Part shown: piece by piece, positions 4,877 to 49,622 of the stretch | Layout of the letters: every line of letters starts with the position of its first letter | How positions within the stretch are numbered: the stretch's first letter is position 1 | Assembly: GCA_904063045.1 (NCBI GenBank) | Contig: CAJFCJ010000020.1 | Location: forward strand, 1,480,916 to 1,544,915 | Origin: Dimorphilus gyrociliatus | Taxonomy: Eukaryota; Animalia; Annelida | Direction: 5' to 3' | DNA length: 64,000 bases | Program-made: the position numbers and the translations under genes | Notes under the pieces: generated by a model | What the model saw: the letters and a program-made list of their open reading frames with translations, nothing else | Told to the model about the DNA's origin: nothing | Database searches by the model: none

Positions 4877-5182
4877 ATGGGACAGTCAAAAGTAAGATCT
4901 GTTGGCATCTCTATGTTCGCTATGACTTTATTGGTAGCTGTTCCAGCAATTGCCTTGTTTATTTGGTTAAGTACCACAGGTTTTAAAGACATGACAGGAA
5001 TCAGTTTGTCAATTTTGTTGACTATTTTTGCTGTTTTACAGGTGAGATATATTATAGAAATCTAAAACTTTAATATGATTATTATCTTTCATTTAAAGGG
5101 TTTAGCTGGTTTTATATTGTGGAAAAAAACTGGATCGTTTGAAAAACTTCATAACCAACTTTCAAATCCAATTTATAGTTAA
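4877..5182 (+). CDS. Orphan 82-aa membrane microprotein (2-3 hydrophobic segments, C-terminal NPIY)
   Basis: Exon 4877-5041, a 57-nt GT-AG intron, and exon 5099-5182 join in frame: MGQSKVRSVGISMFAMTLLVAVPAIALFIWLSTTGFKDMTGISLSILLTIFAVLQ/GLAGFILWKKTGSFEKLHNQLSNPIYS*. A probable 5'UTR intron lies at 4730-4856. Confidence 0.7.
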
Positions 5183-5547
5183 AAACAAAAGTGACTAACA
5201 AAACCTACTTGTTTATTCTGCCATATTCTAGTTTGTTCCACATTTATAGTAGTTTCAATAAAACAGAGCTGTCTTATCAAACTCTCCAGAAACAATAAAC
5301 AGATATGTAACTAAATCCATGATAAAAGACTATTACGTTAATTAGTGAGTTGATTAGAAGTAAATATACACTGTTATCATTTTCACTTTCGCTTACTCTC
5401 CCTTTATCCTGAATCAGTACGTGTCATCCAATATTCTTTATGTGCTAAACAAACTTAACCCACTTGAGAAACAATAAAATAAATATGCCCAACCAACATC
5501 CCTCTCTTCCTTAGTATTTTAAACTCTTCCAGAATTTTAGTGCGTTT

Positions 5548-5560
5548 CCGATAGGTGGCG
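5548..5560 (+). promoter_or_regulatory. CTCF-like motif upstream of ankyrin
   Basis: CCGATAGGTGGCG is close to CCASYAGRKGGCRS and lies about 160 nt before the candidate first ATG (5722). Motif match only. Confidence 0.4.
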
Positions 5561-5721
5561 TTGTTTTGAGATTACAACGCCAATTCTCTGCATCATCGCT
5601 CATATCCGATTCTTAGATATATTCGAACAAAAATTGGTCGGTAATCTTCGCCTTTGGTAGCTATAATATTTAAGAAATTCAAGGAATATTTGGATGTAGT
5701 ACCTTTTCACAACTTTCAATT

Positions 5722-8700
5722 ATGGAAGCTATAAATGATCATAAACATTTGGTAAATGGCGAATCTGATTCAGGTTCGAGAATGCAGTCGCCTACGGTCA
5801 GGCATTTTATTACAACTATGTTATCTATTTGTGCAAATCGAGAGTGTTTGTTGAATATTAAGGCTTGTTTTCCCTTAAAAGTGTACTTTGATTCAAGTAA
5901 ATTTTGTATGTAGACGATTAGCCGGTTGTTCATATACTCTGTCCATATTCTTTTTATTACCTTAACACATATGTGGTATATTCTTCTATAGCACGTACAT
6001 TTTTCAATCGAACTTTATAATAAATAATTCACGATAGAGCCTACCGTCTAAGGCATTTTTCACGAAGGTCACATGATCAAAGGACCGTTGTTAAACTACT
6101 AAGATAATAATATGTTGTGTAACACACTGTTGAGACAGGATACGCATGAGAGACCTTCGTGTACTTTTTAGGTATTTCCTCATTTAAAAACAGGAAGGTC
6201 TATTGAGAAATTTTGCAGTTTGTGTGTTAAGTCGACATATGTTTACTAATGCGGAATTCAATAAACTATGCAGGGTAAAAAAAGCATCTGCATCTGCTCA
6301 ATGAAATTATATATATACCAAAGCGTATTATATAATTCACCTTTAAAATGATAATTTCATGGCTAACTGCAAAATCGCAAATAATTTGTTCATTTTTTTT
6401 ATAAATGATCGCTATTTGAGTGAATACTTTAAGTGATCAATTAGTGTTAGATGAAACTTACAATTGTGTATTGTTGTCGCATAGTAATTTGGTAAGAAGG
6501 AGACCGCGTATACATTTTCCTTATTTCTCATTTTGATTGTTTGGCTTGGCCGAGATATTTGTTAGTAATTTCAGGATCCTCTGAAAGAATGTGTGGGCGT
6601 GGTGCATGCATTCAAGCACCTACTTAATTTTTTTATCTTTAGCAGGCTGATAGAGTCAGTAGTTTTTTAAAAGCTGCTCGTAACGGTAATTTGGAGAAAG
6701 TAATTGTCTATTTAGACAGTGGAATAGATGTCGACATAAGTAATAACGTTAGTATACATGTCGTATTTCAGGCAAATCATATTCAAGTGATTAAACATTT
6801 AAACAGACCGGATTAAACGCACTTCACCTTGCTTCAAAGGAAGGTTACTCTGCCGTTGTTGAAGAGCTTTTAAACCGCAAGGCTAATCTAGATGCCCCTA
6901 CGAGAGTGAGTAAAAATTGCACAACGCGCCTCACGCATCGATTCACAATGTTCTAATTTGCATTTTGTTTTTTTCCTTGGTCTAAAAAAAGAAAGGAAAT
7001 ACGCCCCTGCATATTGCTTCCCTCGCCGGTAAACATAATATTGTGGAGACACTCCTGCGAAATGGAGCCAAAGTGAATGTTCAATCTCAAAATGGATTTA
7101 CTCCTCTATATATGGCAGCCCAAGAAAATCATGCGGCTGTCGTTGCCCTACTTCTTCAAAATGGGGCCAGTCCTACTCTCACAACAGACGTTTGTAGTTT
7201 TATCCTAAAGTACCGATGTTATCTTATTTCTGTTTTTCTGTATCCAGAATGGCTTTACGCCCCTATCTATTGCTTTGCAACAAGGACATAAAAAAGTGGT
7301 CGAAGAACTCATTCAAACCGACAGATCACGTAAAGTGAAATTGCCATCTTTACACTTGGCGGCAAAGAATAACAACACTAGCGCTGTCCAATTATTCTTG
7401 AATTCTCCAGATGCTGATCCAAACCTAGCGTCAAAGGTAAAATCTCTTTCTGCATGTTAGAATTCCTTTGCATATAAAAACAAACATAGCTGAGTAATCA
7501 TGATAACATGATTAACGACGTTAATGCACATAAAAGAGCAGGTGTTAAAAACTAAATTTGACACATGTGTAGGGTGGATTCACTGCTTTGCATATAGCCT
7601 CCCATTATGGTAGCGAAGATGTCGGACGCATGCTTATTGAGCGAGGAGCTAACCTCGATTACAGAGCAAAGGTAATAAAATATTGCACCAGATGAGTACA
7701 TTGACGATAACCTTTTTAACTTTGCCGTAGAACAATATTTGTCCACTACATGTCGCATCAAAGTGGAACAGAGCAGGCATGGTTAAACTTTTACTTGATA
7801 ATGGAGCGGATATTTCCAGCAGTACTAAGGTTATAAAATCATGATAAACAAGAAGTTCAATTAATTGTAAATATAATTTTAAGATTATCGTTTTTTTATA
7901 GGACCTATTAACCGCTCTGCATTGCTCATCCCGATCCGGCCATTCGTCCGTAGTAGAGCTCTTATTAGAGTTTAATGCACCTGTCGATGCTAGAACTAGG
8001 AATAAATTAACACCCTTACACATGGCTGCCCAAGGAAATCATTATGATACAGGTCGCTTGCTAATTTTTAAAGGGGCACCCATAGAGGAAGTTACTATAG
8101 ACTACTTAACTCCATTGCATGTGGCTTCTCATTGTGGCAGTTATGAGATGGCAAAGCTACTATTAGATAGTAGATGCGTTGTTGATGCTCGAGCCAGGGT
8201 AGGGATGACTTTTTAGTTATCAATCATTTTTTGTATATAAATTGGGATTTTTTTAGAATGGTTTCACACCTCTTCATATCGCTTGTAAAAAGAATAAACC
8301 AAGGATTATAGAACTTTTATTAAAATATGGTTCGATGATTGATAGCACCACTGAGGTACCACGATGAATATTGTTCTCTTAGCTGATATTTCATGTTGTC
8401 AAACTATTTCCCATTAGACCGGATTGACACCTTTGCACGTTGCCTCTTGGTCCGGACATAACCAAATTGTGTCATACCTAATTGAACAGAGAGCCAACCC
8501 GAATCAGAAAACTAACCGGGGAGAAACCTGCTTGCACATGGCCGTTAGAGGAAAACAATTAGAAACGACTAAGCTGCTAATTAAGAGTGGCGCTCAAGTG
8601 AACGCCACAGCTAATGAAAACGAGACAGCCCTTCATATTGCCGCTAAGTTAGGCGATCCAGAGATGACAGAATGTTTACTTTATCATGGAGCTGACGGTA

Positions 8701-29143: not shown

Positions 29144-30209
29144 TCAAGTCTTCATCTTCCTCTTAGGTTCTGTCTCCTGCTCATATTCTATTTCAACTCT
29201 GGCTTTCTTACTTAATTTCTTCACAGGTTTCTCCTCCTCAGAACTTTCGTCAGATTCTTCGCCAGGTATTCTAATTGCGGTATCTTCAATATCCTCGTCG
29301 CTCATTTCAAATTCATCTTCACCCACGTATTCAACTTGTTCTTCTTCGTCGGAAGAAGCTTCGTATTCTTGCTCAGCTTGATTATCTTCATCCTCCTCTT
29401 CTTTATCCAAAACTTTATTAAATGCAGCCTGATTGAAATTGTACATATCACCATAAGTTCCTGTTTTCAATCGATCGAGTAATTCTTTTTCTATAGCTGT
29501 GTCTAGTCTAGCTGCAATAAGTGCTTTCTTTTCTCGCCTATCTTCTCGCCGTTCGACTTTTCTGCTCAATGGAACAACTTTTCTTTGACGCTTCAAGGTA
29601 ATTCTTCGAATTCTGGTCAAGTACTGTCTAATTCTTAGTAATCGTTGTTTACACTTATTTTTTACATAGTTCGGCCAATAAGCCAGATGTGTGTTAATTT
29701 GATCAAGAGCTTTTTCAAGGTTTCTGTTAAGTTTAACTTTTTCCCAAAGCTTTCTAGGAAACGCAGCTCGTTCTACGGTTTTCATATACAGAAAAATTTC
29801 ACCTACAAAAAATTATTGCGTAATTAGCCTGATTTAATTATTTCTTTTCATTTTATTTAACCTTTTTCTTCTCTGACAGTTGCATATTGACTGTTCGCTA
29901 ATGGACAAGAATGTCTGTTACACAATCCAGTAAGGCTGTACTCATTTCTACAGAAGTGTTGACTTTTCATACTATCAAAGAAAATAAATTAACGCAATTG
30001 ATCATTTAGACATTAGCCTTACCGTGTCTTGAAAGAACAAAAACTTTTATTGATGATACTCCAGATAACCTGAACGATGAAAAGTTTAAATTACTGTATT
30101 GTCGCTCAAAAATCACATGTGTGATAGTCAATAATTGTCTTGGTTGTTTTGATGAACAAACAATACAAAAGTATAACTACAGCTGATTACTTACATCATC
30201 ATGCTGCAT
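29144..30209 (-). CDS. MAK16: MAK16 ribosome biogenesis protein
   Basis: [19 protein letters not shown].../[27 protein letters not shown].../[21 protein letters not shown]...[17 protein letters not shown], then an acidic tail ending VEIEYEQE. Confidence 0.97.
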
Positions 30210-30632: not shown

Positions 30633-33438
30633 ATGGAAAAAGAAGTGTATATGATTGGTGATAAATCTATAACTGAATTAAGAGTAGTTGATTTAAAAAA
30701 GGAGCTAGAACTTAGGAAATTATCTAAGAGTGGAAGCAAAATAGAATTGGTAAAACGATTGAAAAATGTAAGATATCCTTTTATCACTCTAGCCGCCATT
30801 TTGAGTGTTTTGTCTTTGGTAAACAATTTTGTAATATTTACAGTATATGCGTAATCAGCGATCTCAAAGTGATACGAGTGAAAATGAAAATCAAACCAGT
30901 AAAGTAAGCATATAAATTTTGTGATGAAATGTTTTGTTTTGCATGATATATTCGTATAAAAAATTCGAAAAGAGGCCGAAAACGAAAAAAAAATTTAGAA
31001 GAGAAGCGTGTTTGAACTATTATAATATAGCAACAGTTCAATTATTAAATCTATTTTTATGTATGCAAACGTTTGTTTCCTTTCTTTCAGACAGTTTCTT
31101 GCAAAGAATATTAATTACTCTTGAACAGATATATGATGTCTTATCAATATTATACTAAAATTTGTCATTTTCTGCTTGCATAATATGTTATGCACTCTTT
31201 TAAAGCGATTTTGTTAGTTTCTTTCATAAATTAATTGATTGTTTTTTCAGGCTACTGATTCCGGTGATGGACCAAATGACTTTGTGAAGCAATATCTTGA
31301 AAAGCAACAGCGCACCTACGAGCAAATGTGCCATGAAAAAGAAAAAATTGAAGATAAGCCGACATTACGATCTACAAAATCTCAACCTGCCAATAAAGAT
31401 AAAATTGCAGATGGTAGTATTTCATTTTTGATTGTTCTAAAATTTATTTATATATATCCTATTTGTACTATCAACTTACCACTTAATGAAAAAGAAGCAG
31501 ACAAGCAACCTAGTGAAAATTCGGATCTTGCTGTAGAAAGTAATGTAAAACCTGTATTAGAGTCTAAGGCCTCGAAAATTGATAATACAGCATCAAATCA
31601 AGAGGACGAGAGTAGCTCTCCTGCTAGTAATGAAGATGATCCTAAAGATGACCTAAAAGATAAAGAGGTGAAGTAATTTCATTAAATACAAAAATAGTCC
31701 ATTTAACAGTGTTCGTATTTAGATTGTGAAAGAAAAACAAGTTGATGACGAACCAAAAAAATCTGACAATTGCTCAGTCGAGGGCTCCGAAGTGAGTTAT
31801 TTACTAGATTTTCTAACCAATATGTCTGTTACCCTGGCAAAACTGAAACAATAAAATAGCCAACGACAGGTTAATGTCGTTAGTTGGATGTTTTAACAAA
31901 AAACAATAATTTAGTACAGAAGTGTTGGGCTTCAACGTGTTCATTACAATATAATATTGCTTCACTTCAAGTTATATTTTAAACAACTAGTGTATATTAC
32001 AGTCAGAAGGTAGCAGCAGTAAAGATAATATGGAAGAAGACAAAAAAAGAGAGAAAGATCCAACCGAAGAAAGTTAGCATTTATATTACTAAATTAATTT
32101 TGATTGTAAAGACTATTTACTTGCGCAGGACTGATTTCAAAATCTAGTCAAGCAAAAGATACTCCTGAAGATTTTTTACCATCATCACCTAGTAAAAGTC
32201 CGAGTAATGATCAAGCAAAAGACGATGTTATCTCGAACTCGAACCAAAGTGAACACACAAATGAGGTTTGAATCTAGTTTTATTCTTTTCACTTTTGAGT
32301 AATAAAATTATATTTGATTTAAAAGGAGTCAAAACCCGAGTATCTCTCCGAAGATCAAATTGACAATGATGAAATTTCCATGGAAGTTAATTCAGATGGT
32401 TTAGAATTAAAAAAATCAGAAAAGAATCACACTGAGAAAAATATAATCAATGAATCAAGAGAAGTTCAGCCAACCAAGCGAAAGCTGATTTCACCACCTT
32501 CAACAGAAATAAATGAAAAGAAGCGTGTAATCACAACCACAAGACAGGCATCTAAAATCGATCTGGATGATTCCCTTAGACCAGTAAGAGAGAAGTCAGC
32601 TTCCCCTGCCAGACAGCAACCCTCTCGTGTAATATTGGTGCGAAATTTAGTACGACCCTTTACAATAGGACAGCTAAAATCCGTTCTAAATAGAAACAAT
32701 CCAATTATCAATGATTTATTCTGGATTGATAACATAAAGAGTTTTTGTTATGCTGTTTACGAAACGGAAGAAGCTGCTTCGGATATGCGAAATTTTCTGG
32801 ACAATTCCAAATGGCCATCGTCCAATCCAAAATTACTGAAAGTAGACTTTTCAAGTGAACAAGAAGTCTATAATCATTTAGTTGCTGACAAACCCGATGC
32901 TATTAAATTGCTTAAGATTGATGAATCAAAATTAGAAAAACCAAAGCGTCGAGATAATAGGCAAGTTGAACGAGAGAGGAGAGTTTCAGATAGGGATGCA
33001 AGGGATAGTCTAAGAGATGAAAAGAGGGAGAAAAATAGAGAAGTTGACAGATCCCGAAGAGACCATGTCCGAGAATGGGATAGAGAAAAAATACGGCGAT
33101 CTCCTCAAAGAGATGAAGGAAGATCTCGGTCTCCAAGAAGACGTGAAAGAGAAGAACGCTACGAGAAAATTCATCAGAATGCCCCTGCGAAACTGTTAGA
33201 TGATCTGTTCCACAAAACACAAGCTGTGCCTGCTATCTACTGGCTTCCCTTAACCGATGAAGGAGCTCAATTGAGGGATGAGACGAGAAAGAAAGAAAAA
33301 GAGTCAAGAGAACAGCGACGACGAGAGAGGGAAGAGGAGGAAAAACAAAAGAGAAGGAAGGAACTTTATGAATCCGAACCAAAGCAAAGATATGAGGAGT
33401 TAAGTCGTCGTCGAAGAAATAACTCGAATTCTGACTAG
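30633..33438 (+). CDS. ACIN1: Acinus (SAP domain, RRM, RSB motif; ASAP/EJC component)
   Basis: SAP domain ELRVVDLKKELELRKLSKSGSKIELVKRL. RRM VILVRNLVRPFTIGQLK...IDNIKSFCYAVY...WPSSNPKLLKVDF. RSB motif KLLDDLFHKTQAVPAIYWLPLT. Arg/Glu-rich tail. Confidence 0.95.
30792..30803 (+). promoter_or_regulatory. YY1/pho consensus site in ACIN1 intron 1
   Basis: GCCGCCATTTTG is the exact reverse complement of CAAAATGGCGGC and is promoter-proximal. Confidence 0.55.
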
Positions 33439-34133
33439 GTCTCAATATTACAAATAGTAATGTATTTCTAATTATTTTAAAATCCTATCTAAGCTTGATG
33501 GATAAGTACGTATGCCAGAAAGTAAAATGTAACTGGTCATAAAGTGTTAAATCGTTTATCTTTATACATTTGTATAAATGCGTATGTATTTTTAGATGTA
33601 TGTATGATAAAAACAAATGATAATTTAATGAAGGAATAGGAAAAAGTCAACTTGGTAACTTGGTATATATAGAATTAAAACTGGAAGTTAGCTATCCGTC
33701 TCGGAATACTGTTGTATATTGTTCCTTTGTTACGTTGTGTTATTTTTGTTTAAAAATCCCGTATTGTTAATTTTCAAAATGACAGGGAGTAATACAGGGA
33801 GAGAAAAATCTTCAGAAACTACCATTATTTCATTACTTTCTTTATATTATTTTTTAGTGTAACATCTATTTGGCTATATAATGTTTTTGTATAATTCATG
33901 ATAATTAATGACTTAACATTTTGCATTCAGCAATTACGTGATAATGGCCCTAATGTAAGCTGTAATGAAAGAATAATTTTCTGTATAAATAAAGACTTTA
34001 TTTTCTCAATATTGCATAGATTCAAAATTAGATGGGAAAACGGTTTAATATTATTATAGATATCAATATTTTATCAGAGTAGTTATAAAAATAAAAGGTT
34101 TTAGTTTATTTTTGAAAGAAAGAGAAAAACCGA

Positions 34134-37100
34134 TTACATCTTTGTTACTATAATATCCTGCTGGTTTTCATCCATTAAACTTTCATCCATTAATTCTGAT
34201 TGCTTTTTTAAGGTTCTCTCTTTATTTTCTTGTCTCTTCTGCTTAATTTGAAAAGATGTTACAAGCGATTGCATTTTATATTTATATATATATAAGACAT
34301 GGATAAAAAACCTTAAAATACATTTCCAATTCTGACGGTGGATCCGCTTTATACTTTCTTTGTCCTGTGATAGGAGGCATTGGCCATTCTGTGGGTCTTT
34401 TCTGTCTCTCTTTAAGTGATTGACTCAACGCGTGTCTTTTCTCTGTTAAGTTTTAAATTAAAAAGATGTTTTTCCCTTCCTCGAAACACTTAATCAATAA
34501 AAAATTGTGTTCGAGATAAAGAGAGAGTAGAGTAGAGTATATATAGAGAGAATGAGAGAGTGAGAGAATGGGCCAGAGAGTAGAGGTAGAGATATAGATA
34601 AATAAATAGAGAGGGGTGAAGAAAGAAGGGAAACTGCTAGATTTTACAACCAAAGTACTTAAAAAGAGTATTTTGTTGCAAAATCCATAAGCTCCAAAGC
34701 TTCATATTTATATAATAGAGTAATATTTGATACTTGTAGGTCTATATTAAAGTATGTTTTCTCAGTACCTTCAAACTTTTGGTTAACGGGGCCAACAGAT
34801 GATTCAGTATTTTCCTCGGTTATTTCTTGCAATGAAATTTGTCCTATTCCGACTACACTATTATTACTATTAGAATTGTATTCATTATCGTTGTCATTGT
34901 TGTCATCATCCTCATCATTTGAATCTGAATAATCTGCATCAGAGCCTCTACCTTTGATAGTATAGTTTGGTTTTGGTTTGTTCTGCTCTTTTGTGACAAC
35001 TCTTTGGGCTCTTTCTTGAGCTCTTTTGACAAGTTCTCCTAATAAGTCTGACGAAAATATATTCTTTTCGGCTCTCGATAGTCGTCGTTTTAAAGGAGCT
35101 TTTTCGTTTCTTTCTTTATTAAATAAATGTACCTGATCCTGGATGGATATACTTGGTCGGCGATCCCTTGCTCTATTAAACTGTTCTACGTACGGAGCCA
35201 GCATAGTCGATTGCTGAATATGTTGCGTTATTTCGTCAACTCTTGATGATCGACGACGTTGTATTAATCTATTACTACCGCTGCTTGGAGGTTGAGAATC
35301 TACTGATTTTTTGAAGGGATTAGATATTAGTTTCCCTTTGTTCGATTTAGTAGCCGACGGTAGAGGTGGAGGAGTAGGTGCTCTAGGAATGTTAGATATA
35401 AGCAGTGCATCCTGTTAAAATTATTTCGGTATGATTTAATATGAAGAGGATTGGCGATAGGTACATTGACAGTTTTATACTTACTGGTAGGGGTGGCGGA
35501 GGTGGAATAGGAGCCACATAGTCCGGTGGAGGATGAATTGATTCACAGCTCTCTGATCTAGTCAATTCTGAATGGATAGTTGTTGCGTACAATTGATCAC
35601 CATTATCATCATCATTATCATCATCTATTGTACCATATATATTCTCTTCAACAGGCTCCTCTTTCTTTAAATGTTCCTGATTATTCGACTTTATCTCTTC
35701 TAGATAAGCTTCTTCGTAAATTTGGGCTCCGCTGTCCTCTTCAAAGTCATTTTGGGAATCATATTTTGTTGCTGAACTCTTGTCCTTTGGATTTTCTGTA
35801 TTGTTACAATACTGCTCTTGAGATTTCAAAAAATTCTCAACTTTTGTTTCAATTGGTAATTCCGTAGCATAAATTGGATTTCTATTGGTAATTTCATCCT
35901 CATATATTGGCATATCATTACCGTTTGTATTTTCGTGAATTGTAGTAGGGGGTAGGTTATCAGAAGGAGTGTTTTGAGTCCTTTTTTCATAATGTGTTAC
36001 CTTTTTCGCAGAAGTTTGATTAGGAGGAAGAGGAGCCTTAGACTTTTTCCTCTTAGGTATGGGCGATGAATATACTTCGCTGTAAATATTATTAGTCGAA
36101 TTTGACGCGGAAGTAGCGGCAGACATGCACTCGAATTTTTGCCTTAAAGCGGTCACAACACCAGAAGGGTTTAAATCACCAGACTCACCTCTGTAGATAT
36201 AGAAAATAACTTTTTTGATCTTTTCTTTCGGATATTTCGTTTCGTATTTATATATTAATTAAATAAAAAGTGCTTAATTAATAATATAATAAGTTTGTCT
36301 ATCAAAAATTTACAAACATGTCAAATTGTGTAAGATCAATATTCTCTTCAGATTCATCATAGGAATCTTCACTATTCCGGTGTGTAAAATTTTGTTCGCT
36401 TCCCTCTTTCGGTAGGTAAGGTAGAGTGAATTTACGGGATTCTATTAAAAGATGTCAAATTATTTTATAGGATTATTTATAAAACTGATAATGTTTAATA
36501 AAGATGACAAACTATCTGTAAATAATCTGCTGTGAGCTGTTGATACGACTCTTTGCTCCCTAATACTAATATCTCCACTCTGAGCTTGAACCAGATTCAC
36601 TTCCCGTTTATCGTTGGCATCAAATTTTCCCGATGATTTTCTCTTATGACCCTGAGAAGATTTCCTTTCAAAAAGCTTCATAAGGCCCTGTAATATATAT
36701 GAATGACGTCAAACCCTCTCCTATATTTATTTATATTGTTTCCCGTAATCAGTTTGTTTATTGTTATTAACAAAAAGTAAATATTTTCTGATAGGTCGAG
36801 TTGGACTAAATTCGGATACTTTTCATTAAAAAAAAAGAAAAAGATTGATAAGGAACAAGTAGAGAATTTTTTGTATAAAATCTGCTTATTCCAATTTCTC
36901 TCAACCTTACCGGCTATATAATACATACCTTTCCTTTGCTTTTTGGTTCAACAGAGGACGATCTCTTCATATTATTTATGTCGTGGGTTTCTGTATAGAA
37001 TAAAGGGGTTTTTATTTTTCATTCTTAATTATTCTTACCCTATCTTCGTATTTATTAATTTTATTCCATACCATCAGCAATAATACTTTTTACCGACATT

Positions 37101-42395: not shown

Positions 42396-45300
42396 ATGGA
42401 TCTAGCTAAGAGCATTTTAGGCGTTCATGCTCCAGAAGGGTACAGTTCAAAACGTCTACAACGTGAGTTTTAATCATTTATTAGATTAAAATTGATAAGA
42501 TCATTTAAAGTTAAGTGTATATAAATAGAAGTATGACAGCTGTTGTTACCGTCAGCTAAACACATTGAAGCCATGTAATAATCGATCATATTTTAGCCTC
42601 AGCGACTAGCGAATCTTATTAAAAGTGCAATGACTCTAAGATACTTAATTGAAGTGACGAACTGATACAGATCTAGTTCATTTTCAAAACTCAACTTGTT
42701 TACTTTAGAAATTTTCACATTATCCTCTATTTTCTAAAAGAAGAACACGTTATTTTTATTAATGACCGGAAATAAACAAGAATATAATATTCTACAGTGT
42801 AAATATTGTAAATATTCAGCTTTGTGAAAAGGGTTTAAACTATTCGTACGTGGGCGTATAAATAGTTCTTTTTTTATTGTTATCTATTTTATATTAAAAC
42901 TGAATTGCTTTTATATCTAGCCGAAACTTTATCCGAAGACGAAGATGAAGGAACTATAGTGACAGGAGATGGAATAAGTGTGTCTGCTCCTTTACAGTAT
43001 GAGGGCTCCGACGGATTTGTACCAACACCTGGGGGACCATTCTCAGCTCTCACAGCATCTATGTGGCCACAGGATATACTATCTAGATTAAATAATACTG
43101 TATGCTCTTTAAAATCTTTCTAAATTTATTATTTAGGCTCTTTTTCCCCTAAATTTTTTCTATATTTAGCCTGAAGATGCATCGGGTCAACTCGATTATA
43201 GATATGACGAATTTGGATTTAAAGTTGAAGAAGAAGGTTTTTATATAAATCCACCTCTCACGGATAAATATTGATTATTTTATTTACTTTGAAATATTTT
43301 GAATAGACGGTCCTGAGCAGAATTCAAGTAAACTTTTAAGTACACCTTTTATAGAAGATTCTCAACAACGTTTAAAGTGGACGGCCTATTTAGAATTTAC
43401 GCATAATGAAATTGGAGATTTAACTTGGGATAAAGTTGAAAAACGCCTACCTCGCTCTGAAAAGTTAAGGGGTATGGTTAAACAGGGTATACCTCATTCA
43501 ATGAGACCTCAAATATGGATGAGGTTAACTGGAGCCTTAGATAGAAAATTAAAGCCGGAAACTTCCTATAAAGATATGGTCAAAGCCAGTTCAATTGATC
43601 ATTTAGTGACTTCAAAGCAAATTGAAAAGGTGAATCAACCTTTTTTTTTCAACATATTGCTTCTCACACGAATATAATTTGTATTATTCATCTTTATTTA
43701 TAGGATCTTTTAAGGACAATGCCGAATTGTGCCTGTTTCAGCAATATAAATAGTACAGGGATACCTAGATTAAGGCGTATATTACGTTGTATTGCCTGGT
43801 TATATCCAGATATTGGCTATTGCCAAGGCACAGGAATGGTAAGAATTTATAATATTTTTGTTATCTTATCATTATTAACTTGAGCGATCAAAATTTAATT
43901 AAATAGATAGCCGCTTGTTTATTATTGTTTATGGAAGAGGAAGACGCTTTCTGGATGATGTGTTCTATAATTGAAGATTTATTACCCGCTTCATATTTTT
44001 CAAGTTCACTTATTGGCGTTCAAGTAAGAATTATATATTAAATAAACAATAATTAACATATATTATTTATATATTTAATTATCACAATAAAAAAAAAAAG
44101 GCTGATCAAAGAGTTTTGAGGCAATTAATAGTTACATATTTACCCGAAATTGACGAAGCATTCAAAAGTCATGACATAGGTTAAATATAAAATATACTGC
44201 ATTATGGTCTAAATATAGTTCTCTTGTTGTTTTTGCTTTAAATATTTTCTAGAAGTTTCATTAATCTGTTTACATTGGTTCCTAACTGCTTTTGCAAGTG
44301 TTGTACATATTAAAGTTCTTCTACGATTATGGGATTTATTTTTTTACGAAGGATCTACTGTTCTTTTCCAAGCCACTATTGGAATGTTAAAATTAAAGGT
44401 ATTATCGATCATTTAATAAGTTTGCTTCAAAATAATTTTAAATTGTTTCTTAGGAGGATGAATTAATATCTTTCGAAAATTCAGCTCAAATATTCAATTC
44501 GTTATCAGATGCTCCTGGTGACGTTCAAGACGTTGATGAATTATTAGATGTCAGCCTTATTAAGATCTTTTCAATATAAAATAACCTAGTTTTAATGAAT
44601 CGTCCATATTTTAATAGGTTACCTTTAAAATTTCCGGCTCCCTATCAGATGTCATTATTGATACTCATAGAAGGAAACACTTGGCCTATCTTATGGCCGA
44701 TCAAGGTGCCATTGTGAATCCTGAGTCAATGAAGAATCTTCCAAAACAGGTTATACAACAATTCAATATACTATTTCAAAGAACTGGTTAACAATACATC
44801 CTTCTAAATTTCGTGCCATAGAGATTAAATAAAAGACAACTAAAAAGGTCAAGGTCATTAGTTTCGCTTCTACTAGGATCAGGAACTGAAGAAGAAATAC
44901 AGAAAGCGAAGAATATTCAACAAACGGAATTAATGGTCAATCTTCGAGATGCAATTTCACAAGTTGGCCGCCATTTTCAGTCCTTGGATCCGAAAAATGT
45001 GAAATTAGTCTGTGCTTCTTTCATCCCAATTTCAAAGTCGTTTCTCTTAATTTGATTTAATTATTAATAGAACTTGCAAGCCGATTATACAATGGATAGT
45101 CATGCAAAAGATCTTGAAAATTATGCAAATGTAGCACGAAATAGACGGCGTCGAGCAAAAGCTTTATTAGACTTTGAAAGACACGACGATGATGAATTAG
45201 GATTCAGAAAAAATGATATAATTACAGTAAAATAGACAATTTTGGTTTATTAATGAAAAATATAGAATCTTTCTCTCTGATCAATAGATTATCTCCCAAA

Positions 45301-47218
45301 GAGACGAACATTGTTGGATAGGAGAATTAAATGGACTTCGTGGCTGGTTTCCTGCAAAGTTCGTTGAGTTACTAGATGAACGAAGTAAAAGTTATTCTTG
45401 CGCCGGCGACGACACAGTAACAGAGGCAATCACTGATTTAGTTAGAGGAGTGTTAGTACATAAGCCTATTTTCATTCCCTTTAAGTATTATATACTCTGT
45501 AAATTGTTCCTTCTTTTTTATTTTTATAGATTATGTCCTGCTATTAAAGCTATATTTGAGCATGGATTAAAAAAATCGTACATATTAGCCGGTCCAGGTC
45601 ATCCATGGTTATTTGTAGAAGAGGTTAAAATCAACAATTTAAATAGATAATCAATTAATATTAATCGATGTGCAGGCTGCTACTAAAGAAGTTGAAAAAG
45701 ATTTTCAAAGTGTATACTCAAGACTAGTCCTATGCAAAACATATAGATTAGATGAAGATGGAAAAGTTTTAACTCCTGAAGAATTATTATATAAAGCTGT
45801 TCAAGGAGTGAATCTAACTCATGATGTAGCACATGCTCAAATGGACGTAAAATTTCGATCGTTAATCTGCTGCGGATTAAAGTTTGTATTTATATATTAA
45901 ATGAATATAAAATATTTATAGTATTATGTAATTTCCCCCCTTAATCCTCAAAATAATATTAAAATAACAGTGAACAAGTCTTGCATCTCTGGCTGGAGAC
46001 TCTTTGTTCATGTACGGAGATAATAGAAAAATACTATTATCCATGGTCTTTTATGAGAAGTCCTGGATGGGTGCAAATTAAGTGCGAATTACGGTAATTT
46101 ACTAACTGTTCTATAAGTAAGAATAACATATAAACAACTAAACAAAAAAAGGAGCAAAACTATAAATAGCATATATAATTTATATACAAGTATATTATAA
46201 AATTTTTATAGAACTGACATTCTTTTTTTGTTTTTTTGTTCTCTCTATCTTCGTTCTTTTCATCTTTTTTACGTTGTCTCTAGCTATTATATTCTATGAT
46301 CTTTGTGAACAATCTTTCCCCTATATCTTTGGTTATCCGGCATGCTTACCTTCCTTTTTAGGGTGCTGTCCAACTTCGCTTTCAACTTGACGATCAGTTG
46401 GGAACTTTCGAAAAAGAAGAAAATTATTGAAGAAATTCGAGAAAATGTACAAGAAATGCTTATAAAACACCATTTGTTTAGTTGGCTAATCGATAGTTGA
46501 ACATGTTTCTCTTTTTTTTTTTAGTACTTTTGTATTAAGTTGTAAATAACTTTTTTGCTCTAATTTTGTGGAATAATAAGATATATATATATATATATCT
46601 TTATTTACTTTCTTTTTTCTTTAATATGTATGTTTAACGGTTCAATTTTTCAATTTTTTTCGAGAGAGAAAAATTATCATCTTTCTCTTTTCTTAACTCT
46701 AATTTTTTTTTCTTTTTTTTTTTAAAGCACGTTGTAATGTCTGGTTTTTTGTGAACAAATTTTTATTTTAGGGTACTTGCCAACTTACCATTTGCCCTAT
46801 CTGAAGATTGCGAACTTTCGGCACGTAAAAACATCCAAAAACGTATGCGCGAAATCAAGGCGGGAGTTTTTGATATGCTTGTTAAACATCATCTCTTTAG
46901 CTGGGATATTTAGATATTTATTAGATAATTTTTTTTATTTTGTTTGTTTTTCTCTCTTTTTCTCGTTCTTTTTTAAAAACAGCAAGAAAAAACAAAAAAC
47001 AAAAAAAAATTCCAGGATATTGGATAATTTTAGTTTTTTTGAAAAAAGACTTGACTTCCCTTTCTTTTACCTTTTGCAGATTGCTTTCGCTGTTCTCTTT
47101 TAATTTATCTAGAGATTGGGAAATACCAAATCAAAAGCAATCTGATTTGAGTCGGCCTCTTCGTGACAGTGTTAGAGATATGCTTATAAAGCATCATTTG
47201 TTTAGCTGGGATATTTGA
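42396..47218 (+). CDS. SGSM3: Small G protein signalling modulator 3 (TBC-SH3-RUN)
   Basis: [29 protein letters not shown] ([28 protein letters not shown]), SH3 ([21 protein letters not shown]...[17 protein letters not shown]), RUN ([12 protein letters not shown]...[22 protein letters not shown]), and a C-terminal KHHLFSW motif. Confidence 0.96.
46362..46500 (+). other. SGSM3: SGSM3 alternative last exon 1
   Basis: Phase-2 acceptor (TTCCTTTTTAG). Encodes (R)[45 protein letters not shown]. Confidence 0.85.
46772..46913 (+). other. SGSM3: SGSM3 alternative last exon 2
   Basis: Phase-2 acceptor (TTTTATTTTAG). Encodes (R)[46 protein letters not shown]. Confidence 0.85.
47080..47218 (+). other. 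SGSM3: SGSM3 alternative last exon 3
   Basis: Phase-2 acceptor (TTACCTTTTGCAG). Encodes (R)[45 protein letters not shown]. Confidence 0.85.
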
Positions 47219-48473
47219 GTTTGGTTTCTATGGTTTTTTATTTGTTGGAGGTATCTCTATACGTCAATTATTTTAAACAAACGAAACTCCACACGATTTT
47301 AATTAAATGGTATTCTGGGATAATTTATTATAATTTTATGCCTATCTTTCCTCGTATCAATATTATCATCCCGTATTAATTTCGTTCATAATCATTTCTA
47401 TATCTGTGCCTTAGGTTGTCACAGTGTTGTTTGTCATAATGTATACAATCTGCGTGCTTAAATATGGCTAGAGTGAAGAAGTGAATATAGTAGAGTGTTG
47501 TATATGGTCTAATTGTATTGTACTTATATTAATATATATAAATTGAATCGTTACATAGGTACTGAAGATATGCTAATACAGGTAATTTGTTATGCAGATT
47601 TGATGCAATATATTAATATATTAACCATGTTAGTAATACCACTTGTAAAAAAGTATGACTACTAAAGGTTGATTAAAGATTCGCTTAACATAGCCAATTT
47701 GCATGTTATAAATCAGACCCAGATTTGGTAACAATAAACAAAGATTATTATTAACATTCTTTATCAATAAACCTTGTTTCCCTTTTGTCTATAGAAAAGC
47801 TTAGATCTATTAATCAATTTACTCTTATAAACTGCTCTTCGTTGATAAAGTGATACATAGGCAGAAAGAAAAACTTCCATAAAGAAGCTTTAGTGTGAAA
47901 GTAACTTTAAATTTGCTAAATTGGGTCTTGTTTACTTACTTTTCCGGGTTGAGTCAGGTGAGTAATTTATAAAACAAATGTATTTATAAGCAAACCTTTT
48001 AGGTTAGGCGATCAACATTTGCAAATAACAATAAAGTGCTGTTTGAGAAGATGGAGGTGTTAGTTACCTGCACTTATAGGAGAAATAAATCTAGATAACA
48101 ATAAACAAATGTAATTTAATATATTCCTTAATTAAGAATAATTGAAGATAGTGTCTTGGTTTTAATAAATGGAAAATTATTATATTTATTGCAAAATAAG
48201 AAAAAAAAAACTAATCTAACTAGTCATAAAATGTTTCCAGTAGGTCCATCGTATTCATCTTCGTTGTCCAAATTAATACATTCATTTTATGAACAATATT
48301 TAATTAGAATTTTTTTCACTAATTTGAATATTATTGGTAAAAATATGATACTCTTTTTACGATATTGAACAGCTGTTTTCAAAATTGTCAATCTTTAACT
48401 TGATGCGAAGTAAGTCAACGACTTAAAAAAGATTATTACGTTGCAGTTCTAGGAAATGGAATTTTCGATTTGT

Positions 48474-49622
48474 TTAGGCATAGCTGTTTTCTTCCTTTGT
48501 TGCCCTCATATTCATAATTCGAAAATACATAGAAGGGTAGACAGCTCGTAAGATAATTGCTAGTCTGTGATGGAAGGGAGCCAGGATCACTTCTCTCTTT
48601 TCGTCTTTGACCATGCTTAGAATAACTTGAGCTACATACCGAGGGTGCATGCCCTTCGCAGTAGTCGCATCCATCACTGCAATGTGATACAGAATATATA
48701 TTTAATAGGAAAAAGAGCTCCAATATGTTAACGACCTGCATGCTTTTCGCCTGATGATGTGACAGAGTTTACAGATAAATTTGTTCGAATGTAGGCTGGA
48801 GCAATGACCGAAACTTGAATGCCTTTCGAAGATACTTCAGCTCTCAAGGAATCGCTGTACGCATGAAGGGCATGTTTGCTGGCCGCGTCTGCAACATTAA
48901 TTCTTTTAGCTCGAAAGTATAATTAGTTTTCACCGGCGTAAACTCACAAGCTGATCGATAGGGAATAGCAATTTTACCCTGAACCGAGCTAACATTCACG
49001 ATATGACCTGATTCTTTTTCTATCATGTGTTGAAGAACCGAGGTTGTTAACTCTACCGTTCCGAGAACATTAACTTTCAGCAGCTTGGAGAAGACTGAAA
49101 GCTCAGTCTCATGAGCAACTCCTCTATAGCTAACTCCAGCATTATTGATGAGGATATCAATGGTTGAAGTTTTTGAAATAATTCTTTGAACAATAGTATT
49201 TAAATATCCAGACTTTTCTAGATCTAATTCTTGAAGAATTATTCTTTTTGGATCAGCTGTGATCTGAAAAAAATTCTTTCGGCCAACAATAATAAAAATA
49301 GAGTTATACTACCTTTGGATTATCTAACAAAGACTGCCTCACACGTTCTAATTCAGCTTTCCTTCTAGCACAAAGAACAATCACTGCCCCATTCTCGTAA
49401 AATACCTTGGCACACTCTATAAATATTATGTATTTATTATTAACATATAATAAGCGGAATTAACTATTCTAAGCACTGACCTTCTCCTAACCCCGAGCTT
49501 GCACCTGTTATCAATACTACTTTATCCTTAACGCTTTTTACACTTTTTAATAATCGCCTTGATATCAAAAAAAGAGCAACCGGGATACAGGCTATCACTA
49601 AGGTTCCAATGTACAATTCCAT
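48474..49622 (-). CDS. DHRS7B: Short-chain dehydrogenase/reductase 7B-like
   Basis: N-terminal TM anchor, VVLITGASSGLG, LINNAG, IVNVSSVQGKIAIPYRSA/YAASKHA (YxxxK), YIRTNLSVN, MDATTAKGM. Confidence 0.9.

What the first reader, a model, noticed from the sequence alone, without database searches (positions are those of the whole stretch)
46362..47218. Three intact tandem-duplicated last exons in SGSM3
Seen: after the donor at 46094 there are three homologous exons. Each has a polypyrimidine AG acceptor in the required phase 2, an open frame of about 45 codons, the conserved ML(I/V)KHHLFSW motif, its own stop and its own T-rich downstream spacer. The middles differ strongly (basic [18 protein letters not shown], and the human-like [16 protein letters not shown]). 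Established: human SGSM3 ends in a single such segment after the RUN domain. Inference: keeping three open, motif-conserving copies implies selection for a three-way C-terminal switch on a Rab-GAP/RUN adaptor, coupled to different 3'UTRs.
Basis: partly seen in the sequence, partly recalled or inferred. Interest (0 to 1): 0.82.

Follow-up and report, generated by a model that had tools for sequence, protein, structure and literature searches.

The report
Three alternative endings of SGSM3
One of the two SGSM3 (Rab-GAP) genes of the tiny marine worm Dimorphilus gyrociliatus carries three old, selection-maintained copies of its last coding exon, an arrangement also found in other annelids and in molluscs, where it is annotated as isoforms but I found no paper describing it.

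Summary
After the phase-2 donor at 46094 lie three homologous exons: A 46362-46500, B 46772-46913 and C 47080-47218. Each has an AG acceptor, 45-46 open codons ending in ML(I/V)KHHLFSW, and its own stop.

They are not an assembly artefact or relics:
- The copies are only about 50% identical, with synonymous sites saturated.
- A related dinophilid genome keeps all three in the same order, with dN/dS of 0.02, 0.10 and 0.09, while the spacers have decayed.
- Ridgeia (annelid) and Babylonia (snail) also have three tandem tails with the canonical one last.
- RefSeq lists three tail isoforms in Babylonia, Littorina and Pomacea. An intron-less cDNA contig from an annelid-like relative joins the RUN exon to a basic alternative tail.

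The window is D. gyrociliatus scaffold CAJFCJ010000020.1. Its public gene model ends at B's stop. A second SGSM3 gene in the same genome has only the canonical tail.

Separate 3'UTRs look doubtful, since no AATAAA/ATTAAA lies between A's stop and C.

It is a new member of a known kind (tandem-duplicated alternative last exons). This scan has already noted several similar cases elsewhere in this genome.

The parts
42762..46913 (+). Coding range of the public D. gyrociliatus gene model for this SGSM3-like gene (790 aa); it ends at tail B's stop
   Evidence: One search gives the gene at L008 13178-17329. One search sets the offset at window = L008 + 29584; ATG at 42762, TAG ending at 46913. The length fits exon 15 joined to B: 46+161+2024+142 = 2373 nt.
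45971..46093 (+). Last constitutive exon (RUN domain, ...[14 protein letters not shown]...[10 protein letters not shown]); GT donor at 46094, phase 2
   Evidence: Pfam RUN positions 80-117, E 7e-10. Junctions derived. Sequence read.
46287..46361 (+). Conserved end of the intron before tail A; contains GCATGC at 46340 and TTTGTGAA at 46302. Candidate splicing-control element.
   Evidence: 85% identical to the related dinophilid, against 37% for the rest of the intron. GCATG is unique in the 1.6-kb region and kept in L001.
46362..46500 (+). Tail exon A (45 codons plus TGA): [15 protein letters not shown] middle without proline, ends ...[10 protein letters not shown]
   Evidence: Orthologue in L001 has 1 aa change in 45, with 15 synonymous and 3 nonsynonymous changes; dN/dS 0.02.
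46501..46771 (+). Spacer A-B: T-rich, no AATAAA/ATTAAA; the last ~27 nt before B's acceptor are conserved, including TTTGTGAA at 46748
   Evidence: signals; 27-47% identity to L001 apart from the 3' end.
46772..46913 (+). Tail exon B (46 codons plus TAG): [19 protein letters not shown] middle without proline; end of the public gene model
   Evidence: Orthologue dN/dS 0.10. Annotation end.
46914..47079 (+). Spacer B-C, with an A-rich block at 46977-47011 and a pyrimidine tract plus cttgac branch-like site before C
   Evidence: 56% identity to L001.
47080..47218 (+). Tail exon C (45 codons plus TGA): the canonical type ([19 protein letters not shown], two prolines)
   Evidence: 85% identical to the single tail of the paralogue DgyrCDS11688. 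Orthologue dN/dS 0.09.
47302..47307 (+). First ATTAAA after any of the three stops; candidate shared poly(A) signal
   Evidence: L001 has AATAAA at about the same distance after its C stop (alignment).

Best explanation
The window gene is one of two SGSM3 (TBC-SH3-RUN Rab-GAP) genes of Dimorphilus gyrociliatus.

Mechanism proposed. Its last constitutive exon (donor at 46094) can be spliced to any one of three tandem, homologous acceptors at 46362, 46772 and 47080. Each exon brings its own stop, so acceptor choice alone sets the last 45-46 residues. The exons cannot be used in series.

What the swap changes. The swapped piece is the C-terminal half of the last RUN helix (VLSNFAFNL / VLANLPFAL / LLSLFSFNL), a variable middle, and the invariant ML(I/V)KHHLFSW helix. 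C is the canonical animal tail, with a proline-bounded loop. A and B replace that loop with a proline-free, lysine/arginine-rich stretch.

Shown: the anatomy; purifying selection on all three exons; the same three-exon layout with the canonical copy last in Ridgeia and Babylonia; real mRNA or RefSeq isoforms carrying alternative tails in relatives.

Inferred: that all three junctions are used in this worm. That choice is regulated through the conserved intron ends before A (GCAUGC, UUUGUGAA) and B. That A and B messages run on to the poly(A) signal after C rather than having 3' ends of their own. That the swap retunes what the RUN domain binds (Rap or Rab GTPases, merlin), by analogy with Rab6IP1, whose first and eighth RUN helices contact Rab6.
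For: - Anatomy.
- Gene identity: Pfam TBC, SH3 and RUN on the exons and on the annotated product.
- Genome identity: the neighbouring adenosine-kinase ORF is 100% identical to DgyrCDS12626, and locus L008 equals the window.
- Age of the copies: between copies pS is 0.66-0.79 (saturated) and pN is 0.28-0.39.
- Selection: the orthologous locus L001 has the same neighbours and 95.6% aa identity over 721 constitutive codons with pS 0.65. It keeps A, B and C with dN/dS 0.02, 0.10 and 0.09 (P 3e-9 to 6e-5). Spacers are only 27-57% identical.
- Other taxa, genomic: Ridgeia has three tails with the canonical one last, and so does Babylonia. Clitellate-like contigs L004 and L005 have an alternative tail followed by the canonical one.
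- Other taxa, transcripts: RefSeq isoforms with three different tails after ...KCELR in Babylonia, Littorina and Pomacea, and two or three in Mercenaria, Dreissena and Mytilus. The intron-less contig L010 joins exon 15 to a basic tail.
- This species: the public model ends at B's stop.
- RUN helix role: PMC3676764 and PMC7431699. RUN partners of SGSM3: PMC11725557.
Against:
- The public annotation shows one isoform only.
- The tree of 56 tails is unresolved, so common origin of the three-tail state across phyla is not proven.
- The AlphaFold2 models of RUN plus tail were too poor (mean pLDDT 49 and 45) to say how any tail packs.
- The TTTGTGAA motif is not enriched window-wide: 5 found against 5.95 expected.
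- The only long RNA complementarities are A-rich against T-rich tracts, and they are not positionally conserved.
Confidence: 0.75

Rival explanations
1. Only one tail is really used (B as annotated, or the canonical C). The other copies are decaying relics of exon duplication that happen still to be open.
For: The public model has a single ending. There is no RNA evidence here. The paralogue DgyrCDS11688 manages with one tail.
Against: With synonymous divergence near saturation, all three frames, acceptors and stops are intact in two species. Nonsynonymous change is 10-50 times rarer than synonymous change. Spacers between the exons have decayed to 27-57% identity. Relatives express alternative tails.
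Confidence: 0.1
2. Classical alternative last exons: each tail has its own cleavage and polyadenylation site and so its own 3'UTR. The alternative is three nested acceptors sharing one 3' end.
For: In Babylonia the tails are 2-5 kb apart and each has AATAAA or ATTAAA within 200-900 nt. The cDNA contig L010 has 243 nt of 3'UTR after a basic tail with no second tail in it. L001 has one AATAAA in its A-B spacer (arm I2).
Against: In the window no AATAAA, ATTAAA or common variant lies between A's stop (46500) and C, apart from AAGAAA at 46984 inside an A-rich run. The first good signal is at 47302. The spacers look like pyrimidine tracts.
Confidence: 0.3
3. Assembly artefact or collapsed/expanded repeat: only one copy exists in the real genome.
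For: None found.
Against: The copies differ at about half of their residues. The same three exons stand in an independent assembly of a different species. Three-tail loci also exist in Ridgeia and Babylonia.
Confidence: 0.01
4. The exons are used in series (A then B then C in one message), as the chained gene models of Ridgeia, Lamellibrachia, Paralvinella and Pomacea suggest.
For: Such chained models exist in GenBank.
Against: Each exon ends in an in-frame stop. There is no conserved GT donor at or before the stops in the window or L001. In Ridgeia the genome shows three complete exons, each with its own stop, so the chained model needed invented internal donors. RefSeq models for molluscs use one tail each.
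Confidence: 0.02

Closest known systems
Tandem-duplicated, mutually exclusive or alternative last exons (tandem duplicated exon substitution events; reviewed in PMC9741552, PMC9013439)
   Same: Homologous exons in tandem, in the same phase, with one used per message. The isoforms are identical except for one homologous segment. The duplication is old and each copy is under purifying selection.
   Different: Here the copies are terminal exons with their own stops, so exclusivity needs no special mechanism. There are three copies rather than the usual two. No conserved docking/selector RNA pairing was found.
RefSeq isoforms of molluscan SGSM3 (Babylonia areolata X1/X2/X3, Littorina saxatilis X1/X2/X3, Pomacea canaliculata X2/X3/X4)
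   Same: Same gene family, same junction after ...[10 protein letters not shown], and three alternative 43-46-residue tails ending in HHLFSW. The canonical tail is last in the Babylonia locus.
   Different: Sequence types differ: the snails have one acidic and one basic alternative tail. Whether they are orthologous to A and B is unresolved. Exons are kilobases apart with their own poly(A) signals, against 170-270 nt apart without signals here.
Other duplicated alternative last exons noted by this scan in the same genome (SLC25A32, Rad6/UBE2A, Gs-alpha, FBXL2/20)
   Same: Same genome and the same kind of event: a duplicated last coding exon, old and shared with molluscs (notes; not re-tested here).
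   Different: Those are pairs and this is a triplet. Here the gene itself is also duplicated, and one paralogue has only one tail.
Rab6IP1/DENND5 RUN1-Rab6 complex (PDB 3CWZ)
   Same: RUN fold of eight helices. The first and eighth helices contact the GTPase (PMC3676764). The tail exons here begin inside the last RUN helix, since Pfam RUN positions 118-131 follow exon 15.
   Different: A different protein. No SGSM3 RUN complex is solved; by sequence only Iporin 6IF2 and RUSC1 4GIW match. The analogy is an inference, not a test.

Membership tests
SGSM3 / RUTBC3 (RabGAP-5) family | RabGAP-TBC domain | tested here: met
   Pfam PF00566 on exon 43719-43883, E 2.5e-7. PF00566 and PF23436 on the annotated 790-aa product.
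SGSM3 / RUTBC3 (RabGAP-5) family | SH3 domain between TBC and RUN (absent from SGSM1 and SGSM2) | tested here: met
   PF00018 on exon 45074-45235, E 1.8e-6. The architecture is as described in PMC11725557.
SGSM3 / RUTBC3 (RabGAP-5) family | C-terminal RUN domain followed by the ...DML(V/I)KHHLFSW tail | tested here: met
   PF02759 on three exons. A profile of the three tails finds 124 proteins; the full-length ones that a source names are all called SGSM3 or RUTBC3.
SGSM3 / RUTBC3 (RabGAP-5) family | Catalytic Arg and Gln fingers of the TBC domain; Rab5-GAP activity | not tested
   I did not inspect the finger motifs. Activity needs an assay.
Tandem-duplicated alternative last exons | Adjacent homologous exons in the same phase, each compatible with the upstream donor | tested here: met
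Tandem-duplicated alternative last exons | Each copy maintained by purifying selection | tested here: met
   dN/dS 0.02, 0.10 and 0.09 against the orthologous locus L001.
Tandem-duplicated alternative last exons | One copy per mRNA, each copy seen in RNA | not testable with these tools
The feature is met only in relatives: RefSeq isoforms and cDNA contig L010.
Tandem-duplicated alternative last exons | A separate poly(A) site for each terminal exon | tested here: inconclusive
   No AATAAA or ATTAAA between 46501 and 47301. This points to nested acceptors with a shared 3' end, but non-canonical signals cannot be excluded.
Mutually exclusive exon clusters controlled by competing RNA pairing (docking/selector) | A conserved docking site complementary to a selector next to each variant exon | tested here: not met
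   Only low-complexity A-run against T-run complementarity was found, at different places in the window and L001.

The most novel reading that the evidence does not exclude
The three-tail arrangement (two alternative tails followed by the canonical one) dates back at least to the common ancestor of annelids and molluscs. On this reading it is a conserved switch that changes which GTPase or partner the SGSM3 RUN domain binds. In D. gyrociliatus the job has then been split between a one-tail paralogue and a three-tail paralogue.
Probability: 0.3. Interest if true: 0.6.

Novelty: new member of a known kind. Interest (0 to 1): 0.45.

Why it matters
SGSM3 links Rab and Rap signalling, and loss of its RUN domain is tied to intellectual disability in people (PMC11725557). 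What the extreme C-terminus does is unknown. A natural, selection-maintained set of three interchangeable tails gives ready-made variants for asking what the last RUN helix and the HHLFSW helix bind. The set is present in annelids and molluscs and was reduced to one tail in a duplicate gene.

It also exposes recurrent annotation errors:
- tails chained in series in Ridgeia, Lamellibrachia, Paralvinella and one Pomacea model;
- an orphan 61-aa 'gene' in Nucella that is really an alternative tail;
- a single isoform annotated in D. gyrociliatus.

Tried and rejected
No junction, depth or 3'-end evidence exists for this species.
- Exact look-up of seven window ORFs, to find Logan RNA contigs: none is in the collection.
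- Two contig look-ups (Nucella orphan, Pomacea X2) found nothing on record.
- Tree of 56 tail sequences (44 columns): only shallow groups are supported, so orthology of A and B with the mollusc types cannot be decided.
- AlphaFold2 of RUN plus canonical tail and RUN plus basic tail, with 32- and 37-row alignments: mean pLDDT 48.6 and 44.7. These are unusable, so no fold search was run. The only weak hint is that the C-terminal helix is longer in the basic-tail model.
- Docking/selector RNA pairing: rejected.
- Rfam: no match in 45000-48500.
- I briefly concluded that the window was not D. gyrociliatus. The named protein DgyrCDS11688 is only 75-97% identical per exon and has other neighbours. 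One search settled it: the window is D. gyrociliatus, and DgyrCDS11688 is a paralogue.
Exons were searched separately by reference. Only exon lengths were summed in a script, to compare with the annotated 790 aa.
- I fetched no contig that I took for human. Some short hits look like mammalian genomic ORFs and were not followed up.

Full report
**1.

The last constitutive exon of a plus-strand gene ends at 46093 (GAATTACG|gtaatt), carrying two bases of an Arg codon. Three acceptors follow, at 46362, 46772 and 47080. Each completes that codon and opens 45, 46 or 45 codons ending in ML(I/V)KHHLFSW plus 2-5 residues, then a stop. B and C are 49% and 53% identical to A. At DNA level the similarity is confined to the exons and a few bases of the acceptor. 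A motif scan finds exactly three copies in the 64-kb window. Upstream exons match RabGAP-TBC, SH3 and RUN. I derived 14 introns of 52-89 nt between 43099 and 45971. The intron to A is 268 nt, to B 678 nt and to C 986 nt, all far above this genome's median of 66 nt (bioRxiv 10.1101/2020.05.07.078311).

**2. Which genome and which gene**

The adenosine-kinase ORF next door is 100% identical to DgyrCDS12626 of Dimorphilus gyrociliatus. The fetched locus L008 (GCA_904063045.1, CAJFCJ010000020.1) is the window shifted by 29584. The public model of this gene spans window 42762-46913 and gives 790 aa, so it ends at B's stop. A model running from exon 15 to B reproduces that length exactly: 46+161+2024+142 = 2373 nt. 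I could not retrieve the sequence itself. The annotation pipeline combined AUGUSTUS, Capitella and Helobdella protein alignments and PASA transcripts. Those two proteomes carry the canonical tail, so the choice of B hints at transcript support without proving it.

The same genome holds a second SGSM3 gene, DgyrCDS11688 (scaffold 19, locus L007). Its features are:
- the same exon structure;
- 86.5% aa identity over 726 codons, with saturated synonymous sites;
- different neighbours;
- a single canonical tail after a short intron of roughly 50 nt.

That tail is 85% identical to C but only 46-51% identical to A and B. If rates were similar, the A/B/C triplication is therefore older than the gene duplication, and the paralogue lost A and B.

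**3. Selection**

Between the copies, pS is 0.66-0.79 (saturated) and pN is 0.28-0.39. Contig L001 (Logan SRR23372228, 33.8 kb) comes from a different dinophilid. It has the same neighbours (PfkB upstream, adh_short downstream) and its adenosine kinase is 81% identical. Its SGSM3 is the orthologue of the window gene: 95.6% aa identity, pS 0.65, dN/dS 0.018 over 721 constitutive codons.

L001 has A, B and C in the same order, with intact acceptors and stops. Exon identities are 82-88%, against 27-57% for the spacers. Per exon:

| Exon | Synonymous changes | Nonsynonymous changes | dN/dS |
|---|---|---|---|
| A | 15 | 3 | 0.02 |
| B | 12 | 7 | 0.10 |
| C | 14.5 | 9.5 | 0.09 |

Binomial P is 3e-9, 6e-5 and 3e-5. 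So all three exons are translated and constrained, and A is as constrained as the rest of the protein.

**4. Beyond dinophilids**

A profile of the three tails found 124 representatives in 1.84 billion proteins. Many are genomic ORFs with a non-canonical, lysine/arginine-rich middle.

Genomic loci:
- Ridgeia piscesae: exon 15, then three complete tails at 29205-29489, 32619-32816 and 33874-34032, canonical last.
- Babylonia areolata: tails at 65165-65428 (acidic), 67591-67800 (basic) and 72434-72643 (canonical).
- Clitellate-like contigs L004 and L005: a basic tail followed by the canonical one.
- L002: two tails.

Transcript-level support:
- RefSeq lists three tails in Babylonia, Littorina and Pomacea.
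- RefSeq lists two or three in Mercenaria, Dreissena and Mytilus. Lingula and Tubulanus are listed with non-canonical tails, and the lungfish has two alternative final exons.
- L010 is an intron-less 2783-nt contig that encodes the full 803-aa protein with exon 15 joined to a basic tail, followed by 243 nt of 3'UTR without another tail.

A maximum-likelihood tree of 56 tails resolves only shallow clades. Common ancestry of the three-tail state is suggested by the shared layout but is not shown.

**5. How the choice is made (inference)**

Each tail has its own stop, and no conserved donor follows any stop. Acceptor choice is therefore sufficient to fix the C-terminus.

The 75 nt before A's acceptor are 85% conserved between the two dinophilids, far above the synonymous-site level. 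They hold the only GCATG(C) in the region. About 27 nt before B are conserved, and both introns share TTTGTGAA. That octamer is not enriched window-wide (5 found, 5.95 expected).

No AATAAA or ATTAAA lies between A's stop and C; the first is ATTAAA at 47302. My best guess (about 55-60%) is three nested acceptors in one composite terminal exon with a shared 3' end, rather than three separate 3'UTRs. Babylonia and L010 suggest that separate 3' ends exist in species with larger spacers. A docking/selector mechanism is not supported.

**6. What changes in the protein (inference)**

Exon 15 covers Pfam RUN positions 80-117 of 131. The first 10 or so residues of each tail therefore finish the last RUN helix, and the rest is an SGSM3-specific extension.

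C has two prolines in its middle, while A and B have none and carry KKKK or RK..K.R clusters. The two AlphaFold2 models were poor (pLDDT 49 and 45). Their only, weak, agreement is a longer terminal helix in the basic-tail protein.

RUN domains have eight helices (PMC7431699). In the one cited RUN-GTPase complex the first and eighth helices bind Rab6 (PMC3676764). SGSM3's RUN is reported to bind Rap proteins and merlin (PMC11725557). A partner-binding switch is thus plausible but untested.

**7. Known or new**

I found no paper that links SGSM3 to exon duplication or alternative tails. The isoforms do sit in RefSeq for molluscs. The kind of event is well known (PMC9741552, PMC9013439). This scan has already logged several duplicated alternative last exons in this same genome.

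I file it as a new member of a known kind, with moderate interest. The points of interest are the triplet, its apparent age, and the contrast between the one-tail and three-tail paralogues.

**8. Limits**

- No human contig was fetched.

Noticed in passing
L007 (D. gyrociliatus CAJFCJ010000019.1) 5001-8541: D. gyrociliatus has a second SGSM3 gene, DgyrCDS11688. It has the same exon structure, 86.5% aa identity, different neighbours, and only the canonical tail after a short intron of roughly 50 nt. The three-tail and one-tail genes are paralogues.
   Followed up: partly
window 42396-42467 and 42762: The public model starts its CDS at 42762. Residues 1-24 of the paralogue align at 79% to 42396-42467, so the true first coding exon is probably missed.
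   Followed up: no
L006 (Ridgeia piscesae) 33991-34410: A 42-nt unit is repeated 10.1 times. It reiterates the last 14 codons plus stop of the canonical tail ([13 protein letters not shown]) into the 3'UTR.
   Followed up: partly
L009 (Babylonia areolata) 65712-66094: Three short partial copies of the end of the first tail exon (...PTPSHHLFSWLL*) lie downstream of it. This is a second case of tail-end reiteration.
   Followed up: no
Proteins P0127, P0270, P0277, P0251, P0041: The GenBank models of Ridgeia, Lamellibrachia, Paralvinella and one Pomacea entry chain alternative tails in series. Nucella lapillus KAL8610310.1, a 61-aa 'hypothetical protein', is an orphaned alternative tail exon.
   Followed up: partly
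Proteins P0142, P0201, P0144: Lungfish RefSeq isoforms X1 and X2, and a Logan transcript, differ in the final exon (...[24 protein letters not shown] against ...[22 protein letters not shown]). Some vertebrates therefore also have an alternative SGSM3 ending.
   Followed up: no
window 46977-47011: An A-rich genomic run (AAACAGCAAGAAAAAACAAAAAACAAAAAAAAATT) lies in the B-C spacer. It is complementary to several T tracts nearby and is likely to prime oligo-dT internally, giving false poly(A) sites.
   Followed up: no
window 46302-46309, 46748-46755, 46340-46345: TTTGTGAA stands upstream of both the A and B acceptors, and GCATGC stands 22 nt before A. All three are kept in the related dinophilid L001.
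   Followed up: partly
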